DNA of 64,000 nt from Vitrella brassicaformis CCMP3155 (GCA_001179505.1 CDMY01000149.1:117416-181415); one strand, 5' to 3'; counted from the first letter of the stretch, positions 12,102 to 22,175 are shown. Program-made: numbers and translations. Notes: generated from the letters alone by a model not told the origin.

Positions 12102-14219
12102 ATGGGCAACGGTGCTGCGGGGAGATGCGGGGTAGACTTCCAGCCGCAGTATCAGTATTTCCAGCCGAGCCCTCCTCCCAGCCCAGGACGTTCCTCGAGA
12201 GACCCATGGAGGTCAAAACACGACCATCAAACCATTGTTTTGCCATCAAACCATCACAAACAGCGGCACGAACACACCCGTGTGGTCCCTGTTTGCTGCT
12301 TGGGTGCACAGTTTGGATTTTGAGTGCGTCCGAGGGGAGCTATCGGACGAGAACCTGCTGCAGAGATCTGGACAGGTGCGTGGTGGAAGGAAGGATAGGA
12401 TGCGTGGGTGGTGGATGCATCCGATATCCCGTTTTGACGCCACTGTGTATGTATGTTTGTTTGTGCAGCAGAAGCAGGTGTGCCGCGTGGGTGAGATCCA
12501 GCTGTCTGTAGGGTGGTCATGCGTCAAGGGATACAAACCCAACAACCCCGTGCTGCCCAACCAAGACGACTTCCTCATCGCAAGGCAAGGCAGGGAACGA
12601 AAGGCACACACACACACACGGATGGATGGATGGATGGATGGATGGATGGATCCGCATGCATCATGTGCGGATGGATGGACGCAGGATTGGGGAGGATGCT
12701 GTCTATGCTGTGTTCGACGGACATGGTCGGTACACAACAAGGGGAGGGAGGGGGCGTCGTGGTCAATGGTCGGGCGTGGGTGGATGGATGGATGGATGGC
12801 ATGCAGGTGATTTGGGTCACGTCATCTCCCACGCGACCAAGATGTTCTTCTCTAGGGTCCTACACGATCGGTGAGTGAGGAAGGAAGGCAGGGAGGGATA
12901 TATGACACATCGATGGGCATTCTCTCCTGTTTTCCTCCTCCCCTTTTGGTGCAGTGCTCATCTGTGGCGTCAGGGGTGGCGTCACGGCAAGGAGTATGTC
13001 GTCAAGCTCATGGATCAGCTGTTCAGAGAGGTGAGATCGCATGCACACCCATCCATCTATCGACACACCTTGACCGACAACACAACGATTGTTGTGTGTC
13101 GTCACGTCATACATGTCTGTCTGTCAGTGTCAGGAGTATTTGGTGACGGCGTATCCGATGGAGACCGAGTGGTCGGGCACCACGGCCACGGTCATCATCC
13201 ACTACAGGGCGCCAAAGATACTCTGCGTCGCACACGTGGGCGACTCGCGCGCAGTGCTACTCAACCCCAGACGGACACCCGCCGCCGCACATCGTACGTC
13301 CGTCTCGTTGGCTTCTTCTCTTCTCACGGGGGCGTGTGGATGTGTGTGTGTTTCATTGTGTGGTCAGCGTATGTAGGGTACATGTTTGGCGGCATGCCAC
13401 TGCAGCCGTGGGAGGCGCAGGAGCTGACGGCCGACCACAACCCGTCCAACCCAAACGAAAGAAGACGCATACACCACGAGGTGAGCGACACGAGAGAGAG
13501 AGACAGAGAGGCCGACGGACGAACGTCCATGTCTCTCTCTGGCCATACACACAGGGCGGGATGGTGACCTTAGACGGCGAACGGCTGGCCATCCACCCGC
13601 CGTCGCAGCCCACCCACTGCTCGTCGGGGTCGATGCTGGGCACCCTCTTCCCCAGGTGCCAGTCGTTCGTCGGCAGCCCCACCCTGTCGCTGTCGAGGTC
13701 GCTGGGTGACACCAACATGCAGTCCAAGGGCCTCTCGTACCGCCCGGACGTCGCCCTCGTCAACTGCATGGAGGGCAGCATGCTCGTCGTGTGCACCGAC
13801 GGCGTGTGGACTCACATCAGGACGCCGGTCGGCAGGCACAGGGAAGGAAGGAGACACAGTACAGTGTATGTGCGTGCGCATATCGTTTATGTGTGCAGGA
13901 GGCGGCTGAGTTGGTTGCTGCGTATTCGTCTCTGCAGGGTATTCAGGATGCGTCCAACAACATCGTGGGCGTGGCTTGGGAAAGGTCAGCCAGCATGACC
14001 AAAGAAAGAGGGGAGGAGGGTTGAGAGGGCTGAGATGGATGGATGGACGGATGGATGTGTGTGTGCGCATGTCGTCAGGTGGCGCATGAACCCCTACGTC
14101 GGTGAGTCAGCTGAGCAGCGAGCCAGTCATTCTTTGTGGCATGTATGTCTGTATGCGTCGTGCCCGCTGTGTGTGTGTGTGCAGATGACATCACTTCTAT
14201 CGTGGCCTACATCACGTGA
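12102..14219 (+). CDS. PPM/PP2C protein phosphatase with a putative N-myristoylation site
   Basis: Spliced motifs KGYKPNNPVLPNQDDF, YAVFDGHG, SGTTAT, VAHVGDSRAVL, LTADHNPSNPNERRRI, LSRSLGD, VCTDGVW and DDITSIVAYIT*. Starts MGNGAAG. Confidence 0.9.
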
Positions 14220-14947
14220 GGGAGTGGTTGGTTGAGCGAACTGCCTGTGTGGCGTGTGTGAGGGAGTGTGTACGTTTTCACGCTGATGGATGGATGGATG
14301 GTGTACACTCATGTGTATAGCGTCACGTCAATGCATTAATGGACCCATGTGTGTTTGTATGTATCACACTATTGAATTACACAGAGTCCACTGTACCCAT
14401 GGAGCGACCCTGTGGTGTGTGCGCTCTTCTGGTGCGTTGATGTCTGACTGTCCCGCTGCAACGGGATGGCTGTCAACTGACGCTTAGTTGGCAGCCAAAC
14501 CATTGCAGCACGACCCTCGACGTCAACACAGCGGAAAGCATGACAAGGGCTGCCAACACACACCCACCCACCCACCCACCCATGCACACGCAACGGAAAA
14601 ACGATTTCATGAAAAACAACCATCCATCATCCGTCGCGCCGTGTTCCTCCCTCCCGCCCTCCCAGCCAGATGATCTGTCTGTGTATACACATATGCACCT
14701 ACCTACCTACCTACCGTACAACACCGTGGCTCACAAATAGACGGACGGGTCTCTTCTGTCTTCTCAACCAATTGGTCTGTCTGCCTGCAGGGCCCTACTT
14801 GCAAAAGCTGCCGATGTGTGTTGGCCCCCCAATGTGTAACTTATGCAGTCATGACGCACAAAAAAGAGCCCTGATCGTCTGTCTACCTAGGCTAACGTCT
14901 CACAAATGACTGTCTACCTATCTACCGGCCGGCCGTCAGGCAGTGAG

Positions 14948-17255
14948 TCAATCGAGGCCGACGGTGTCACACCCCAATGACACCACATGCATCGGCTGCA
15001 CCGCACCCACCAGCCGCCTCTGACGCAAATCAGACTGCAGCCGCACCAATGGCACCATCCCACCATACCCACACGCACCCTTCAGCGCTGCTGACGGGCC
15101 AGACACAGATCGACGCACCGTCATGGGGGCCACAGAATCGTTCGGTGGTGGCCGCATCAGCTCCCTCACTGACTCACGGAAGGTCGCCGACCCGAGAACG
15201 ATGAGGCAGCTGAATGGGATGGGCTTGGTGATGGTAGGGCTGGGCTGGAGCAGCCGGATGAGCGCCTCGTCGATCAGTGGGCGGCTGAGTGGCGGCGTGT
15301 CCATTTCTGTGCGGGTCGGTGGGGGGGTGGGTGAGGAGGGGGGCAGCCGCCAGTATCGGCAGAAGAAAGCGTCTCTGTACCTGCACATGGATGGATGGAT
15401 GGAGAGACAGCGACACAATGATGCACTGTCAGAGAATGCGTGTGCGACTCTTCGTCTGAGCCTCACCTCTCTTCCATGGCATCGAGTTCGCTTCTGCATG
15501 GGATGGTCTCCTGCTCATCGTCACACACGACGATGCCCAGCCGGGGAGGGGGAGGGACATCAGCACCCGGCGAAAAACCCTCCTCCCCTCCTCTCTCGTC
15601 CCTTGCCTCATCCAGTCCAAAAGACGACAGCGACAGTGTCGACGCCATCGAGAGCGCGGCTGTTCCTTCGCCGCCGGCGATCTCATCCTCAGCATCCTGG
15701 TACTCGCACCACGACCCGAATCCCTCTCCCTCGATGTAGGGCGCCGTCTCGCACACGTCGGGCAGCCCAGGGCCCGCCCACGGCGCACGCCGCCGCCTCG
15801 ACGACCGAAGGGATATCGGCACCGCTGCCGGCTCGACCTCCTCGGTCGCCGGCCGCCTCGCAGAATGGACTGGCACTGGGGGTGGACAGACAGTCTTCAC
15901 GACGAAGTCTGGCGGCTCCTGACAGGCGTGATGGAGGAGACTCTGCCGCGCGATGCCTGTCGAGGGGCTGGTCCGCGATGGTGGGATGGTGGGGGCAGTG
16001 AACTGGGGGGAGCCTGGCGGTGGAGGGCTGTCTTGTGCTAGTGCGTGGGTGAGTGATGATGGTCCTGGGCCTGGGCTGGATGGCACTGTGCGGAAGAAGG
16101 CCTGGGCGCACTGCAGGGCCAGGGGGACGTGATTGCCATCGGCTACGATCAAGGTGCTCTGCCACGGCCAGTCGCGAGCAGCCTCATTGTCGTCACTCGA
16201 TCCGGCGGCCTTCAGCAGTGGAGTACCGACAGGGCCCTGCATGTGCACAATCGACCCTGACACCACACACACAGACGCGACAATCGTTCCATGACACCGT
16301 CCAGAGTACATACATGCATTTGACGTACCCAGCAGCAGCGAGTTGAGGAATCTGTAGAGGGCGTCCTCAGGATCCACTCGCAGAACGAAGTCCATGAAGA
16401 GGTCGGTGTTGGTGGTCGCCGTCGTGACGGGCGGCGCGTACCTCGTGACCACCTCCCCGTCTGAGTCACCCCCACTAGTAGTGACCGCGATGCCCACACA
16501 CTGCCCCGCCTCGCACACGATCCGGGTCGCCCGTGGCCGCCTTAGCGGCACCACACGCACCAGGACGCCCGTCGCGACACCCTGTTGCTTGAGCTCCTCG
16601 CGATGCACCAACACATGGGGCACCCAGCCGTCTCCCACAGCACAGCCGTTGTCGATAGTGTATCTGTCAACGGTGGGGCCATTGTTGACATCTGGCTGCG
16701 TTGGTTCTGCGGCGAGGCTGACGAGCGACGAGGAAGAGAAGGAACAAGTGCGGGGGCCGCTGGGGGTGGAAGACGACGTGTGGTTGTGGTGGTGGTGGTG
16801 GACCTGCTGTATCACCGGCCGATCGCCCTTGTTGACGCCGAGGGGGTCAGGGGAAGACGGCTGGTCGCCCGGAGAGGAGGAGGCGACCCCATTGTAGTCC
16901 CTCTGTCTCCGCTGCTTGGCCTCCTTCCAGATGGCCGTCAGCAGCACATGAACGGCATCCATCGACAGCATGCGATACGCCGACGACATGACCCTCACCC
17001 CCCACACATCGCCGCCCTCGGTGTCGGGACCACCAACGTCACCGCCTCTCGCCCGCTTGCTGACCCGTCCCTCGAGAGCCAGCCCGCGACAGTGCTTCGG
17101 GCTGTGTGTGCGGTGGTGGCAGTGGTGGGCATGTGTGTGCGAGTCCGGCAGCAGGTCGAGCATGCGCTTGCGCCGCGACGCTCGACGGCGGGAGGGGGAG
17201 GGGCTGAGGGACCGGGGGACGGGGCAGTGCACAATGCCCTGATGATACACAAGAG

Positions 17256-17288
<33 letters not shown>

Positions 17289-20200
17289 AATGTGTCGTCT
17301 GCGTGTGGTTTGTTTGGCTGGGGTGTGGAATCTTACTTGTGTCCATGTGGCTGCGAGTGCCAGTTTTGCGGACAGCCGTCTGTGTTGGTTGCGCTCCAGG
17401 AGTCCCCGCAGCAGCTGCATCGCGGCCGCATCGACGCCCTGGAACAGGGGACCACCGAACTGCATGTGAGCAATCACAGAGAGTGAGAGAGAGACACACA
17501 TCCTTGGATATGCATGATGGCAGGTGCATGAAGTGACATTTCTCACCTCTATCGGCTCCTCAGTGATGGCCCGCATAATGTCGCACCTGCAGGCAGCAGA
17601 GACGGCCACACGTGAGGAGATGGATGCAGCTATCCATCCATCCATCCATCCATGTGTGTGTGCTCATGTGTGCTCAGTGTTGGGTACATACGTTCCGTCG
17701 AATGGCAGCATGCCGGTGAGCATGAAGTAGAGGCACACCCCGGCCGACCACACGTCGACCTTCTGCCCGTACTCGGCCCAGCCGCCCACTATCTCGGGCG
17801 CAGTGAAACGCAGGTTCCCTGAACAACAGAACGAGGGGAGGGGGCCTTTCTCTTCCCAGTGGCTCGCTCCTTGCAGGACGGACCTGCGGGTGTCATCATG
17901 CCGTCAAGGTCCCCCTTGCGAGCGATGTTGAAGTCAGCCACCTTCAGACACGCACTACACACCTCACCTGATGTGAAATCAGGGACACAGACCGACATGG
18001 AAGGCGCGCACACTCTTGCGTGTCGTCCTTCATGCACGGACTTGATGTGAGCAGCAGGTTTTTGATGGAGAGGTCCCGATGTGTGACGCCGTTCTCGTTG
18101 AGGTACACCAGAGCCGTCATCAGCTGACGAAACACGTGACGCGCCTGACCATCTAAACACCACACACACACACGCACGCACGGAACACACCCATTGCCCA
18201 CGCTGTGCTCAGCTGGTTTGTCTCTCAATCCCTTCCTTACCCGAGAAGCGTCTTTTGCCCTTGAGTTGTGCCATTTTCCTGGACGCGAGCGGGTTGACCT
18301 CCAGGTCGCCGTATCGCTCGACGGCCTCCTCCAGGTCGGGCCCGTCGATATACTCCATCACCAAATGCAAGGCGCCCTCACGATCGAAGTCCTGGTCGGA
18401 TCGATATCGATGTGTGATAGACCCGCCCGGAGAGTGAGGGGCTGTCTGTCGTGCGGCTTACGTTGATGAGTTCGTGTGCCTTGACGATATTGGGGTGGTT
18501 GACCGACTTCATGACCTCGAACTCACGCTCCACCTGCACACACCACACCACAACACACCACACCACCATGACAGAACACGGCTTCCACCGACTGACTGAC
18601 TCATCGAGTGACTGACTGACCACATGTGCGATCTCGATGTCGTCAGTCCTGACGGTCTTGACGGCCACCACACAGCGGTCCGCACGACGGATGGCCCGCC
18701 GAACCACACCCAACGTCCCCTGCCCCCGTCTCTCGAGCAGGTCGTATCTCTGGTACACGGCATGGTCGCGGCGCATCAGACTCCACCGATTGTTGCCGGG
18801 GTCGGTCACCTCGACGTCAGTCAATCTGACACACACACACACACACACACGGACAGTGATGCGCTGATGGCGTTGAGTGTCGTGTCCGTGTGTGTCTGAG
18901 TATGTGTGTCTTCCTTTCTTACGGTGTGTTTTGTCTGCGTAAGAGTTTTTTGTCGACTGCGATAGCGATGGGCTGCATGGACGACTGCATGAAGGACGCC
19001 CGGCGCGACAAGAGCCGCGACTGCGACAGCCGCAGCCCCTCGCCGACCGTCGACACTGAGATGTCACCCGTGCTGCTCCGACGATTGTCTGCACAGACAC
19101 ACAGAACAAACGCCAGCCAACACCATGCCAGCCAGACATACGCCAGCCCCCGCCCTTCCAGCTCACTTTTGATGGCGGGCACACTGACGGCATGGACAGG
19201 TGCCGTGCTCATCCAGCCGTCCAGACACTCGGACGTGCTGCGGGCCACAGCTTCGGGCAGCCGAAGTGACGGTGACGGCGAGGCCTCATCGCTGGGCAGC
19301 TTGGGCAGCATCTGGCCGGCCGAGGTCGTCGCGTGCATCGACGCCGTGTCGAGCAGGGGCGTCCGAAAGAGACCGTCGAGCTCGAGGTCGCCTGTGGGCG
19401 ACCGCTCCACACGCTCAGAGGGCTCGTCAGGCCAACCACCACCACCCTGCACCGTCAATCCATCCATCCATCCATTTGACACGTTGACTCCCCCCCACTT
19501 GTGTGAGTGCCGTGCTGACCAGGGGGCTGTGTGCGAAGCTGCCCAGCAGTGCGTTGTGTCGGTCCAGATGTTCCGCCAGTGTGTCCAGGGGCGCCTCTCC
19601 GAGTGCCCATGAGGGCGTCATGAGCACCATCTTGTCGACGGCCGTCGGTCTGTCGCTGCTGCCGGTGGAGCGGCCCTGTGTGGGCATGTAGTAGTGGAAG
19701 AAGAGGCCGACGGCCGGGTGCTTGCGCATGAGGGAGAGGACAGAACCTGTATGTAGTCATGACAGGACAGGACAGGAGAAACGTGTTTGTTTTTCGGGTC
19801 CATGGAGGGCATGGATGTACACATACATATACATACCCCAGGTGACGTCCGGGACGGGGTGCTCAATCACCACAAGGAAACCCTGCTCGTCCATCTCTAG
19901 CGACTGCATCACATCATAATCACACACACACACACACAGGTCCTCTCGTGAGGCCTGCGTCTGCCTCCCCCCTACCTCCCTCCGCCACACACTGACCTCG
20001 GTCACGAGCCACACATGCCCCGCCTTCTTCCGCCTTTTCCTCCCGTGGATCCTCACGCGGCACACACTCTGCCTTTCGGTGTGTGTGACGGGCCTCAGCT
20101 CCTCCAGCCGGTCGCTGACGGCCCGCCTGTACCGCCGGACGTCGCTCGGGTGCAAGAATGACCAGAGGTTCTTGTACAGCAGGTCATCGTGGCGGTAGCC

Positions 20201-20299
20201 CAGGATGGCGTGGCTGCTGGGCGACACATACCGGATGCTGCCCGTCGAGGCGTCGAACTTGGTCACCAGGGAGGGACCACAGGCACACGACGGCTCCAT
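14948..20299 (-). CDS. PAS domain + CAMK-like Ser/Thr kinase + degenerate FNR/cytochrome b5 reductase-like module
   Basis: PAS ~19830-20299: ILGYRHDDLLYKNLWSFLHPSD..VWLVTE|SLEMDEQGFLVVIEHP. Kinase ~17350-18740: GQGTLG, VAVK, EREFEVM, HRDLSIKN, ADFN, FTAPE, DVWSAG, RRLSAKLAL. FNR-like ~14948-16600. Junctions I checked from PAS through to the end are in phase. ATG 20299 sits just after a possible acceptor (TTACCTAG), so the start may lie further upstream. Confidence 0.8.
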
Positions 20300-20501
20300 C
20301 TAGGTAACAGGGGCAATGATACGGCGAGGTGGCGTCAGGGGCGGCGCCGCCAAGGGAGAGAGAGATGCACCATGAAGCGCGATGAAGGACTTTCTTTGCC
20401 TCGGGATTTATGCGGCGGCCTGCAGCGGACCGTGAAAGAGCGGCACGTGCTGAAGTAGTGGAGATAATGAGGGAGAGCGGTAGAAAAGCTCTTTTCTGTA
20501 A

Positions 20502-20508
20502 AGCTCGC
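20502..20508 (+). promoter_or_regulatory. AGCTCGC candidate element
   Basis: Between the divergent PAS-kinase and signal peptidase genes. Confidence 0.35.
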
Positions 20509-20575
20509 AGCCAAGCTTGCAGAGTGATCGAAATCGGCGCCGCTTCCCCCCGAAGTCGCCAGTCCGCAGCTGCCA

Positions 20576-22175
20576 ATGTCACCGTCTTTCCTGATATCGC
20601 TTATTTCGGCCATTTTTGCGTCGCATCTTGTGCTACTCGCCGCAGCGTTCGTCCCATCGTCGCTGCCGTCATGCGGGAGGACGCAGGCGCATCGCCTGGC
20701 GACGCTGGAAGGCAGGAGGCGTGTTGTGAGGCGCGCCTTGCCCGGCGCGTGGATGATGAGTCGAGATGCACACCCAGCCACCAAGGTACAAAAAGGATGC
20801 AGGCAGGTGATGTGTTTGATGGCATGCAGACGTGTGCACGCACTGTGCCTGTGCTTGGGTTTGGTTTGCAGGAGGTTGAAGCGCCTTGTGCAGCAGAAGA
20901 TGCGCGTGACTGGAAGGTCAGCGGTATCAGGGTGCCGGCTGATGGATCAGCAGGAGCTGCGCCGTCCATCCCGCCAGCCCCATCAAATATGACAACCTCC
21001 CCCGTTGCATCCTCCCCCTCTCTCCGCCAGCCATCAGTGTTGAGATCCCTCCTTTCGCCGCCCAGAAGGGGCGATGGCGGTCGGGGCGATGATGGTCCGA
21101 CCGATGACGACGTCCCATCGCCGCCCCTGGCCAAGCCCCGGCGCGACACGGCCGACGAGGTGCGGAACGTGTTCATCGCCTTCTTTATCTCCTTGATGAT
21201 CCGGATCTTTGTTGCTGAGCCGCGGTTCATCCCCTCGCTGTCGATGTACCCGACGCTGGATGTGGGCGACAATGTGGTGGTGGAGAAGGTCAGCAAGTAC
21301 TGGCGGGAGCCCCACAGGGGGGACGTCCTCGTGTTCGTCCCGCCACAAGAGGCTCTCAGGTGAGTGAGATAGGCATGTGGGCACGCAACAGTGGCAATCG
21401 GTTTTTGGTGAGCTGTTTGTCGATCAGCTTGAGCGGGTCAAAGGACGACTCGAGCGCCTTTGCACGTCTGCTGAACGGCGGCAAGTCTGACCGGGCCTTC
21501 ATCAAGCGGTGCGTGGCCGTCGGGGGCGATACAGTGGAGGTCAAGAACGGACGGCTGTTTGTCAACGGAGACCTGCAGGAAGAGAAATTCATCAACGAAG
21601 CACCACGGTGAGTGAGTAGTGAGCCGATACAGACAGACACACACAGTCTCCCTCTCCATGCCATGCATCTCTCTCGCNNNNNNNNNNNNNNNNNNNNNNN
21701 NNNNNNNNNNNNNNNNNNNNNNNNNNNNNNNNNNNNNNNNNNNNNNNNNNNNNNNNNNNNNNNNNNNNNNNNNNNNNNNNNNNNNNNNNNNNNNNNNNNN
21801 NNNNNNNNNNNNNNNNNNNNNNNNNNNNNNNNNNNNNNNNNNNNNNNNNNNNNNNNNNNNNNNNNNNNNNNNNNNNNNNNNNNNNNNNNNNNNNNNNNNN
21901 NNNNNNNNNNNNNNNNNNNNNNNNNNNNNNNNNNNNNNNNNNNNNNNNNNNNNNNNNNNNNNNNNNNNNNNNNNNNNGGGGGGGGGGTATGGTATGGCAG
22001 GTACATGTTTGGTCCGTTCAAGGTGCCGGATAGCATGGTCATGATGCTGGGCGACAACCGCAATCAGTCGCTGGACTCGCACGTGTGGGGGTTCCTGCCG
22101 GCGGACAACGTCATCGGCCGGGCGGTGTTCAAGTACTGGCCGCCCTGGAGGGCAGGCACCATACCCTTTGAATAA
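20576..22175 (+). CDS. TPP: Plastid type I signal peptidase (S26A; thylakoidal processing peptidase-like)
   Basis: Catalytic Ser box EPRFIPSLSMYPTLDVGD, Lys box AFIKRCVAVGGD, and MLGDNRNQSLDSHVWGFLP..IGRAVFKYWPP. Signal peptide MSPSFLIS..LLAAAF-VPS. One intron contains an N gap. Confidence 0.92.
21678..21977. other. Assembly gap (300 N)
   Basis: N run inside a signal peptidase intron, next to poly-G. Confidence 1.

What the first reader, a model, noticed from the sequence alone, without database searches (positions are those of the whole stretch)
14948..20299. One spliced ORF fuses a PAS domain, a Ser/Thr kinase and a degenerate FNR/cytochrome-b5-reductase module: candidate redox-sensing kinase
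Seen: in-phase GT-AG joins link PAS (HPSD..VWLVTE|SLEM..VVIEHP) to a complete kinase. Downstream the ordered elements EAGQCVGIAV, VVTRYAPPVT, MDFVLRV, ALYRFLNSLLL|GSIVHMQGPVG, STLIVADGNHVPLAL, RPLIDEALI and CLIVLGSATFRESVRELM follow. Known: the FNR/b5-reductase fold has the same order (GQ, RxY[TS], DLxIKxY, GDxIxxxGPxG, MIAGGTGITP, GRI, CGP). Inference: the FAD motif (RxYT to RYAP), nucleotide motif (GGTGITP to DGNHVP) and CG (to LG) are all altered, so the module may be a flavin/NAD(P)H-binding sensor or a pseudo-enzyme. PAS-kinases are known, but I do not know this three-domain architecture. It could be a two-input signalling hub.
Basis: partly seen in the sequence, partly recalled or inferred. 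Interest (0 to 1): 0.78.

Follow-up and report, generated by a model that had tools for sequence, protein, structure and literature searches.

The report
PAS kinase with degenerate reductase-like tail
An alga (Vitrella brassicaformis) has one 16-exon gene that joins a PAS sensor domain and an intact protein kinase to a long tail that looks like a worn-out flavin reductase, an arrangement with no detectable relative elsewhere, though the reductase likeness rests on weak evidence and no function is shown.

Summary
A 16-exon minus-strand gene (20299..14948) translates exactly to the public 1362-aa model "unnamed protein product [Vitrella brassicaformis CCMP3155]". Spliced RNA contigs confirm three introns, including the two inside the FNR-like part.

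- **PAS:** real (TIGR00229 27.3 bits against a cutoff of 22.9; ARNT/BMAL-type PAS in PDB, E 3e-6).
- **Kinase:** complete and CAMK-like (Pkinase E 1.6e-47). Catalytic residues are kept; DFG reads DFN.
- **FNR-like module:** supported only by weak, convergent signals.
  - Pfam's only E<0.05 hit is FAD_binding_6, E 0.016-0.038, below the gathering score.
  - The only NCBIfam hit is the FNR-type reductase MmoC, E 0.009.
  - Language-model neighbours are FAD_binding_6 for residues 870-1012.
  - Separately, they are NAD_binding_1 for residues 1188-1305.
- **Inconclusive tests:** AlphaFold had no alignment to work from and failed (pLDDT 33-35). A thin E. coli FNR profile gave nothing.
- **Cofactor motifs:** every canonical FAD/NAD(P)H motif is degenerate, so a pseudo-reductase is likelier than a redox sensor.
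- **Relatives:** a HMMER scan of 1.84 billion representatives found no relative of the tail.
- **Open point:** no RNA contig bridges the kinase and the tail.

Verdict: a new variant of a known kind, of moderate interest.

The parts
14948..20299 (-). Whole coding region: 16 exons, 1362 codons plus stop. It equals the public Vitrella brassicaformis CCMP3155 protein P0001.
   Evidence: The exon list reproduces P0001 exactly. P0001 was found as the only hit of the HMMER scan and is named.
19868..20254 (-). PAS domain (residues 16-113), split by intron 19904-19996.
   Evidence: PAS_3 26.6-28.8 bits against a cutoff of 25.6 on segments. TIGR00229 sensory_box 27.3 against 22.9. ARNT2/BMAL1 PAS in PDB, E 2.9e-6. 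No LOV-type NCRF motif.
17343..18740 (-). Ser/Thr protein kinase domain (residues 377-650), spread over exons 6-13.
   Evidence: Pkinase E 1.6e-47, profile 3-262 of 263. Single exons hit collinear profile positions. The nearest solved kinases are CaMKII, CDPK, DCLK and the MSK C-terminal domain. Intron 17819-17883 is confirmed by an RNA contig.
16630..17238 (-). Low-complexity linker (residues 653-855), rich in Ser, Arg, His and Pro. It starts with a basic RRRASRRKR stretch.
   Evidence: No Pfam hit. Composition. RNA contigs cover 16544-17016 and 17043-17216.
16198..16629 (-). FAD_binding_6-like segment (residues 856-975), with elements AGQ, TRYA, FMDFVLRV and LGSIVHMQGPVG. It is split by the 72-nt intron 16257-16328.
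   Evidence: Pfam PF00970 E 0.016-0.038, residues 892-967 against profile 28-96 of 99. NCBIfam MmoC E 0.0087. Atlas features 0.91-0.92, nearly all neighbours FAD_binding_6. Intron confirmed by RNA.
16078..16170 (-). Presumed first strand and helix of the NAD-binding-like half (residues 985-1015: STLIVADGNHVPLALQCAQAFF).
   Evidence: Aligns with the AGGxGxxP strand-loop-helix of four E. coli FNR modules. Inference only.
15556..16077 (-). Insertion of 174 aa rich in Pro, Ser, Ala and Gly (residues 1016-1189), inside the NAD-binding-like half.
   Evidence: Composition. No family hit. No secondary structure in the low-confidence model.
15137..15555 (-). Rest of the NAD-binding-like half (residues 1190-1300: RLGIVVCDD…SELDAMEERY…FFCRYWRL…RPLIDEALIRLL…CLIVLGSATFRESVRELM). 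It is split by the 86-nt intron 15381-15466.
   Evidence: The two best Atlas feature neighbours are NAD_binding_1 clusters (0.86, 0.85). Collinear alignment to E. coli FNR modules. Strand-helix alternation in the low-confidence model. Intron confirmed by RNA. No HMM hit.
14951..15136 (-). C-terminal tail (residues 1301-1362), followed by the stop codon at 14948-14950.
   Evidence: Translation. An RNA contig runs through it and at least 131 nt below coordinate 14800.

Best explanation
This is one lineage-restricted Vitrella brassicaformis gene for a 1362-aa signalling kinase.

- **Input (inferred):** an N-terminal PAS domain of the bHLH-PAS/PAS_3 type, not a LOV domain, is the likely regulatory input.
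- **Catalytic part (catalytic residues read from the sequence; activity not assayed):** a CAMK-like Ser/Thr kinase domain. It keeps the glycine loop, the VAVK lysine, the alpha-C glutamate, HRD…N, the DFN aspartate and APE.
- **Tail:** about 710 residues of low-complexity linker plus a strongly diverged two-lobed FNR/cytochrome-b5-reductase-like module. This is a FAD_binding_6-like part followed by a NAD_binding_1-like part, and a 174-aa disordered insertion interrupts the second part.
- **Why probably not an enzyme (inferred):** all residues that normally hold FAD (RxYS/T, GxxS/T), NAD(P)H (GxGxxP) and the CGP cysteine are replaced. The module is most likely a pseudo-reductase used as a regulatory or docking domain, not a working flavoenzyme or redox sensor.
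- **What is shown:** exon structure, three introns, PAS and kinase membership, and the absence of sequence relatives of the tail.
- **What is inferred:** FNR ancestry of the tail, loss of cofactor binding, and a single transcript across the kinase-to-tail junction.
For: - **Gene model:** 16 in-phase GT-AG exons reproduce public protein P0001 exactly.
- **RNA:** spliced contigs remove introns 15381-15466, 16257-16328 and 17819-17883, and cover exon 14 up to 17216, which is 22 nt from its acceptor.
- **Kinase and PAS:** Pkinase E 1.6e-47 and PAS_3. TIGR00229 above its cutoff. PDB PAS hits at E 3e-6. CAMK-type nearest kinases.
- **FNR signals:**
  - FAD_binding_6 is the best Pfam hit of residues 835-1020 and the only one for residues 856-1012 and 880-985, E 0.016-0.038, aligned to profile 28-96 of 99.
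  - An independent library gives only MmoC, an FNR-type reductase, at E 0.0087.
  - Segments of the same protein outside the PAS, kinase and FNR-like barrel regions gave no hit below E 2.
  - Language-model features put residues 870-1012 among FAD_binding_6 clusters (0.92, all 40 neighbours). Residues 1188-1305, with no shared residues, fall among NAD_binding_1 clusters (0.86, 0.85).
  - The order and spacing of AGQ, R.Y, G.IV.M.GP.G, IVA.G…P, IVV.D…EL…Y and LG follow four E. coli FNR modules along their whole length.
- **Motif degeneration:** read directly from that alignment.
Against: - Both AlphaFold models were built without an alignment and are unusable (mean pLDDT 35.3 and 33.4). The fold is therefore not verified.
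- FAD_binding_6 scores 14.8-16 bits, below the 21.1-bit gathering score. No HMM detects NAD_binding_1.
- The Pfam and NCBIfam hits overlap on the same G.IV.M.GP.G stretch, so they are not independent.
- hhalign against a profile of four E. coli FNR modules gave P 0.1-0.4. With an HMM of that profile, 448 of 2000 shuffles scored as well as the real sequence.
- The Atlas scores of 0.86-0.92 are in a range that shuffled proteins sometimes reach.
- The region was selected by a reader scanning many windows, which inflates the chance of a coincidental resemblance.
- No RNA contig crosses intron 17239-17336, and the PAS exons have no RNA cover.
Confidence: 0.6

Rival explanations
1. The tail is not related to FNR at all. 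It is a fast-evolving, largely disordered, species-specific extension of a PAS-kinase, and its short motifs resemble FNR by chance.
For: - All HMM scores are below curated thresholds.
- There is no PDB sequence hit.
- hhalign and the shuffle test with E. coli FNR modules are non-significant.
- AlphaFold finds no confident fold.
- No homologue exists to test conservation.
- The region was picked out by scanning many windows.
Against: - Two HMM libraries and the language-model search each give only FNR-type families.
- A second, non-overlapping segment points to NAD_binding_1, the expected partner family, in the expected order.
- Other segments of the protein outside its named domains give no comparable hits.
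- The alignment to FNR modules is collinear over about 270 residues.
Confidence: 0.2
2. The FNR-like module is still functional. It binds flavin and/or NAD(P)H in a non-canonical way and passes redox or NAD(P)H status to the kinase.
For: - The scaffold motifs that shape the fold (AGQ, GP.G, IVA.G…P, LG) are kept.
- The open reading frame is maintained over 710 codons and two spliced introns, which suggests selection for some function.
- From general knowledge, E. coli Fre shows that FNR-like proteins can work with loosely bound flavin.
Against: - R.Y(S/T) reads TRYA.
- The G..S/T phosphate-binding turn is replaced by acidic DPEDALY.
- GxGxxP reads DGNHVP, and CGP reads LGS.
- A 174-aa insertion splits the nucleotide-binding half.
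- No experiment bears on the question.
Confidence: 0.12
3. The public model fuses two genes: a PAS-kinase that ends near exon 13, and a separate downstream gene for the FNR-like protein that starts inside exon 14.
For: - No RNA contig bridges 17216 to 17337.
- RNA contig depth is two to three times higher over the last three exons than over the kinase exons.
- An in-frame Met (RKRMLDLL) lies about 75 nt into exon 14.
Against: - Donor GTAAGA and acceptor …CATCAG are canonical and in phase, and exon 14 is open from its first codon.
- Reading through the donor gives no nearby stop for a kinase-only product.
- An RNA contig reaches 17216, upstream of that Met and 22 nt from the acceptor.
- A 3' bias in depth is usual for poly-A libraries and contig depths are poor measures.
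- There would be only about 100 nt for a promoter.
Confidence: 0.1

Closest known systems
PAS kinase (PASK / yeast Psk1-2): N-terminal PAS domain(s) regulating a CAMK-group Ser/Thr kinase
   Same: An N-terminal PAS domain, a long linker, then a CAMK-like catalytic domain in one polypeptide.
   Different: There is no evidence of orthology. PASK is absent from the 60 best PDB kinase matches and from the 120 best database matches, which are CaMKII, CDPK, DCLK and MSK C-terminal domains at about 28% identity. PASK ends soon after the kinase, whereas this protein adds about 710 residues with an FNR-like module.
FNR-like two-domain reductases (Pfam FAD_binding_6 + NAD_binding_1: cytochrome b5 reductase, nitrate reductase flavin domain, Fre, Fpr, Hmp, MmoC)
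   Same: The same order and spacing of scaffold elements: GQ, R.Y, hydrophobic strand, G.IV…GP.G, IVA.G…P, strand-helix repeats, LG. The only family-level signals obtained are for these families.
   Different: Scores are below family thresholds. All cofactor-contacting motifs are replaced, a 174-aa insertion splits the NAD-binding half, about 60 extra residues follow it, and the module is fused to a kinase instead of a redox partner domain. No fold verification was possible.
Phototropin-type LOV kinases (flavin-binding PAS plus kinase)
   Same: A PAS-fold sensor N-terminal to a Ser/Thr kinase in a photosynthetic eukaryote.
   Different: The LOV flavin-cysteine motif (NCRF) is absent. The kinase is CAMK-like rather than AGC-like.

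Membership tests
PAS domain (Pfam clan PAS_Fold / TIGR00229) | Profile match above the curated cutoff | tested here: met
   TIGR00229 27.3 bits against 22.9. PAS_3 26.6-28.8 against 25.6 on residues 1-215 and on exon 1, but 23.1 on the full-length protein. ARNT2 PAS-B E 2.9e-6.
Eukaryotic protein kinase (Pkinase PF00069) | Full-length profile match and catalytic residues (GxGxxG, VAIK Lys, alpha-C Glu, HRD, Asn, DFG Asp, APE) | tested here: met
   162.6 bits, profile 3-262 of 263. The sequence reads GQGTLG, VAVK, EREFE, HRDLSIKN, DFN and APE. The DFG glycine is Asn.
PASK orthologues | Kinase domain closest to PASK among kinases | tested here: not met
   The best PDB and database matches are CaMKII, CDPK, DCLK and MSK. 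PASK is not among those listed. No tree was built.
LOV/phototropin kinases | Flavin-adduct cysteine motif (GxNCRFLQ) in the PAS core | tested here: not met
   Neither NCRF nor CRFL occurs in the protein.
FNR-like reductases (FAD_binding_6 + NAD_binding_1) | FAD_binding_6 profile match at or above the gathering score | tested here: not met
   14.8-16.0 bits against 21.1. E 0.016-0.038, though it is the top or only hit.
FNR-like reductases (FAD_binding_6 + NAD_binding_1) | NAD_binding_1 profile match | tested here: not met
   No HMM hit for residues 985-1300, 1180-1362 or 1188-1300. The only support is language-model neighbours at 0.86 and 0.85.
FNR-like reductases (FAD_binding_6 + NAD_binding_1) | Six-stranded antiparallel barrel followed by a Rossmann-type domain | tested here: inconclusive
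   AlphaFold without an alignment gave pLDDT 35.3 and 33.4, so no fold search was run. The order of predicted strands and helices is compatible but of low confidence.
FNR-like reductases (FAD_binding_6 + NAD_binding_1) | FAD motifs R-x-Y-S/T and G-x-x-S/T | tested here: not met
   These read TRYA and DPEDALY in the alignment with Fre, Fpr, Hmp and Hcr.
FNR-like reductases (FAD_binding_6 + NAD_binding_1) | NAD(P)H motifs G-x-G-x-x-P and C-G-P | tested here: not met
   These read ADGNHVP and LGS.
FNR-like reductases (FAD_binding_6 + NAD_binding_1) | Flavin content and NAD(P)H-dependent electron transfer | not testable with these tools
   Needs purified protein.

The most novel reading that the evidence does not exclude
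The diverged FNR-like module still binds NAD(P)H or a flavin and gates the adjacent CAMK-like kinase. Together with the PAS domain, that would make this a two-input eukaryotic Ser/Thr kinase that reads cellular redox or NAD(P)H state directly. No such sensor architecture has been described, and it would have arisen de novo in the chromerid lineage.
Probability: 0.12. Interest if true: 0.75.

Novelty: new variant of a known kind. Interest (0 to 1): 0.42.

Why it matters
PAS-regulated kinases and FNR-type reductases are both well known. A kinase carrying an FNR-derived module has not been described to my knowledge. The paper library held no paper pairing the Pfam names FAD_binding_6 and Pkinase, and 1.84 billion representative proteins held no relative of the tail.

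If the FNR ancestry is real, this is a clean case of a redox enzyme scaffold recruited into a signalling protein and stripped of its cofactor sites. That bears on how pseudo-enzymes arise and on signalling in chromerids, the photosynthetic relatives of apicomplexan parasites.

It is also a caution about annotation. The public record lists only the kinase domain and misses both the PAS domain and the tail's possible origin.

The practical weight is limited. It is a single species-specific gene with low expression, weak fold evidence and no functional data.

Tried and rejected
- **Word search.** The search with the 591-aa tail was blank within its length limits of 384-1221 aa. The full HMMER scan then found only the protein itself.
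- **Structure prediction.** AlphaFold2 without an alignment on residues 835-1362 and 856-1012 gave mean pLDDT 35.3 and 33.4. I ran no fold search on these models because matches to them would be meaningless. I did not feed AlphaFold an alignment of true FNR proteins, because that would force the answer.
- **Own FNR profile.** I took E. coli Fre, Fpr, Hmp and Hcr and searched for more members. The hits were all at least 80% identical to the seeds, so the profile stayed thin.
  - hhalign of the tail against it, with or without the insertion, gave P 0.1-0.4.
  - The HMM score of the real sequence was matched by 448 of 2000 shuffles.
  - This is inconclusive rather than negative, because the profile has four distant bacterial members and no b5-reductase type.
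- **PDB sequence search.** phmmer of the tail against PDB sequences gave only histidine-tag artefacts and one chance hit.
- **Pfam.** No hit on the linker, the insertion or the C-terminal tail.
- **Rejected readings.** A LOV/phototropin reading (no NCRF motif) and PASK orthology.
- **Papers and earlier findings.** Nothing on this gene or this architecture.


Full report
**What is in the sequence**

The interval 14948-20299 carries a minus-strand gene of 16 exons. Every border is GT..AG and every join is in phase. The exon list reproduces a public protein of 1362 residues letter for letter (P0001). Its sources call it "unnamed protein product [Vitrella brassicaformis CCMP3155]" and "Protein kinase domain-containing protein", with only kinase families precomputed. 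The start ATG at 20299 follows an in-frame stop directly. A divergent S26 signal-peptidase gene begins about 100 nt further on the other strand.

**RNA evidence**

Eight runs hold the stretch. Two of them (X1, X2) hold it in spliced form, so they are RNA. Two others (X3, X4) are collinear with the genome.

- One 1594-nt contig of X1 joins 14800-15378, 15465-16255 and 16328-16420. After the stated cut shifts, this removes exactly introns 15381-15466 (86 nt) and 16257-16328 (72 nt).
- X2 shows the same two joints, plus 17819-17883 (65 nt) inside the kinase.
- The 72-nt intron is a multiple of three without a stop. Only RNA could show that it is removed.
- Further contigs cover exon 14 at 16544-17016 and 17043-17216, and parts of exons 6, 10 and 11.
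- No contig crosses intron 17239-17336, which holds a (TCTG)n repeat where assemblies break. The PAS exons have no contig cover. A single transcript is therefore the parsimonious reading but is not demonstrated.

**PAS and kinase**

- On residues 1-215, PAS_3 scores 26.6 bits (cutoff 25.6) and TIGR00229 scores 27.3 (cutoff 22.9).
- The Pfam PAS model aligns residues 18-113 and so runs across the exon 1/2 join.
- The nearest solved sequences are PAS domains of ARNT2, BMAL1 and PER (E 2.9e-6).
- The LOV cysteine motif is absent.
- Pkinase matches residues 377-650 over profile 3-262 of 263 at E 1.6e-47. Single exons hit collinear parts of the profile.
- The sequence keeps GQGTLG, VAVK, the alpha-C Glu, HRDLSIKN, the DFx Asp (DFN) and APE. 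I predict an active enzyme.
- Its nearest relatives are CAMK-group kinases: CaMKII, CDPKs, DCLK1, MSK C-terminal domains and BRSK, at about 28% identity. PASK is not among them.
- The public model carries a 22-aa insert between subdomains V and VI. An alternative in-phase splice (donor 18299, acceptor 18144) removes it and fits the profile without a gap. RNA does not cover this spot.

**The tail**

Residues 653-1362 have no relative. The word search was blank. A HMMER scan of 1.84 billion representative proteins returned only P0001 itself.

With the introns removed, several searches point the same way.

- Pfam gives FAD_binding_6 as the best hit for residues 835-1020 and as the only hit for residues 856-1012 and 880-985. 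The E-value is 0.016-0.038 at 14.8-16 bits, aligning residues 892-967 to profile 28-96 of 99.
- NCBIfam gives one hit, the FNR-type reductase subunit MmoC, at E 0.0087 for residues 925-975.
- Seven further scans of parts of the protein outside the PAS, kinase and FNR-like barrel regions gave nothing below E 2. The composition of this protein therefore does not throw up hits freely.
- The language-model search put residues 870-1012 among FAD_binding_6 clusters (0.92, all 40 neighbours FAD_binding_6 or FAD_binding_8).
- It put the non-overlapping residues 1188-1305 next to two NAD_binding_1 clusters (0.86 and 0.85).

Each signal alone is weak, and the two HMM hits lean on the same G.IV.M.GP.G stretch. 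The strongest argument against coincidence is that the second half of the module independently draws the partner family, in the right order.

A MAFFT alignment of the tail, with residues 1016-1189 left out, to E. coli Fre, Fpr, Hmp and Hcr is collinear over both lobes.

**What failed**

- AlphaFold2 had no alignment to work from and gave mean pLDDT 35.3 and 33.4. I did not search folds with such models.
- My own FNR profile stayed thin, because the database hits were near-identical to the four E. coli seeds.
- Against that profile, hhalign gave P 0.1-0.4 and the real sequence was no better than 448 of 2000 shuffles.

Weighing all this, I put FNR ancestry at about 0.75 to 0.8.

**Function**

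In the alignment the cofactor-contacting motifs are all gone.

- R-x-Y-S/T reads T-R-Y-A.
- The G-x-x-S/T turn that holds the FAD pyrophosphate is replaced by the acidic DPEDALY.
- G-x-G-x-x-P reads D-G-N-H-V-P.
- C-G-P reads L-G-S.
- A 174-residue insertion rich in Pro, Ser, Ala and Gly splits the nucleotide-binding lobe.

The scaffold residues are kept: AGQ, GP.G, the hydrophobic strands and the LG turn. This is the usual picture of a pseudo-enzyme. I therefore favour a regulatory or docking role for the module over flavin or NAD(P)H sensing. The open frame is maintained across 710 codons and two spliced introns, which suggests the tail is under selection for something.

**Comparison and novelty**

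The protein works like a PAS-regulated CAMK-type kinase, as PASK does, but it is not shown to be a PASK orthologue and it is not a LOV kinase. The FNR-like tail fails every curated membership criterion that I could test. It should be described as FNR-like or FNR-derived, not as a member of the family. I found no paper pairing the Pfam names FAD_binding_6 and Pkinase and no relative of the tail.

I rate it a new variant of a known kind, of moderate interest (0.42). The architecture is unusual and apparently unique. Against that, the gene is a single-species orphan, the key fold claim rests on weak convergent evidence, and the attractive redox-sensor idea is contradicted by the motif losses.

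Noticed in passing
window 12875-14000, + strand: Exons of a PP2C-type protein phosphatase lie just downstream and converge on the kinase gene (Pfam PP2C E 0.002 and 0.008 on two ORF pieces; motif …SRSLGD…VVCTDGVW). A kinase and a phosphatase tail to tail may be coincidence.
   Followed up: partly
window 20410-22175, + strand: A type I signal peptidase gene (Peptidase_S26, E 2e-13 and 9e-9 on two exons) diverges from the PAS-kinase start, with only about 100 nt between them. An assembly gap (run of N, about 21680-21990) lies inside it.
   Followed up: partly
window 15378-15403 and 19451-19477 (introns of the gene): (GGAT)n / CCATCCATCC microsatellites inside introns attract hundreds of unrelated contigs in all four runs, with depth peaks of 400 and over. 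This is a genome-wide simple repeat that breaks assemblies and creates false 'joints' of about 4 kb in the read layout.
   Followed up: partly
window 18042-18391, minus strand (kinase exons 8-9): The public model keeps a 22-aa insert (VNPLASRKMAQLKGKRRFSDGQ) in the kinase. An alternative in-phase splice (donor 18299, acceptor 18144) removes it and fits the Pkinase profile better. This may be alternative splicing or a model error.
   Followed up: partly
window 17130-17238, minus strand (start of exon 14): Right after the kinase domain comes a basic stretch, SPSPSRRRASRRKRMLDLL. It could be a nuclear localisation signal, a pseudosubstrate or an RRxS phosphorylation site, at the position where CAMK-type kinases carry their autoinhibitory segment.
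   Followed up: no
window 19499-19520, minus strand (exon 3 donor): Two in-phase donors lie 21 nt apart, GTCAGC at 19519 (used by the public model) and GTGGGG at 19498. They differ by 7 residues (VSTALTQ), and no RNA contig decides between them.
   Followed up: no
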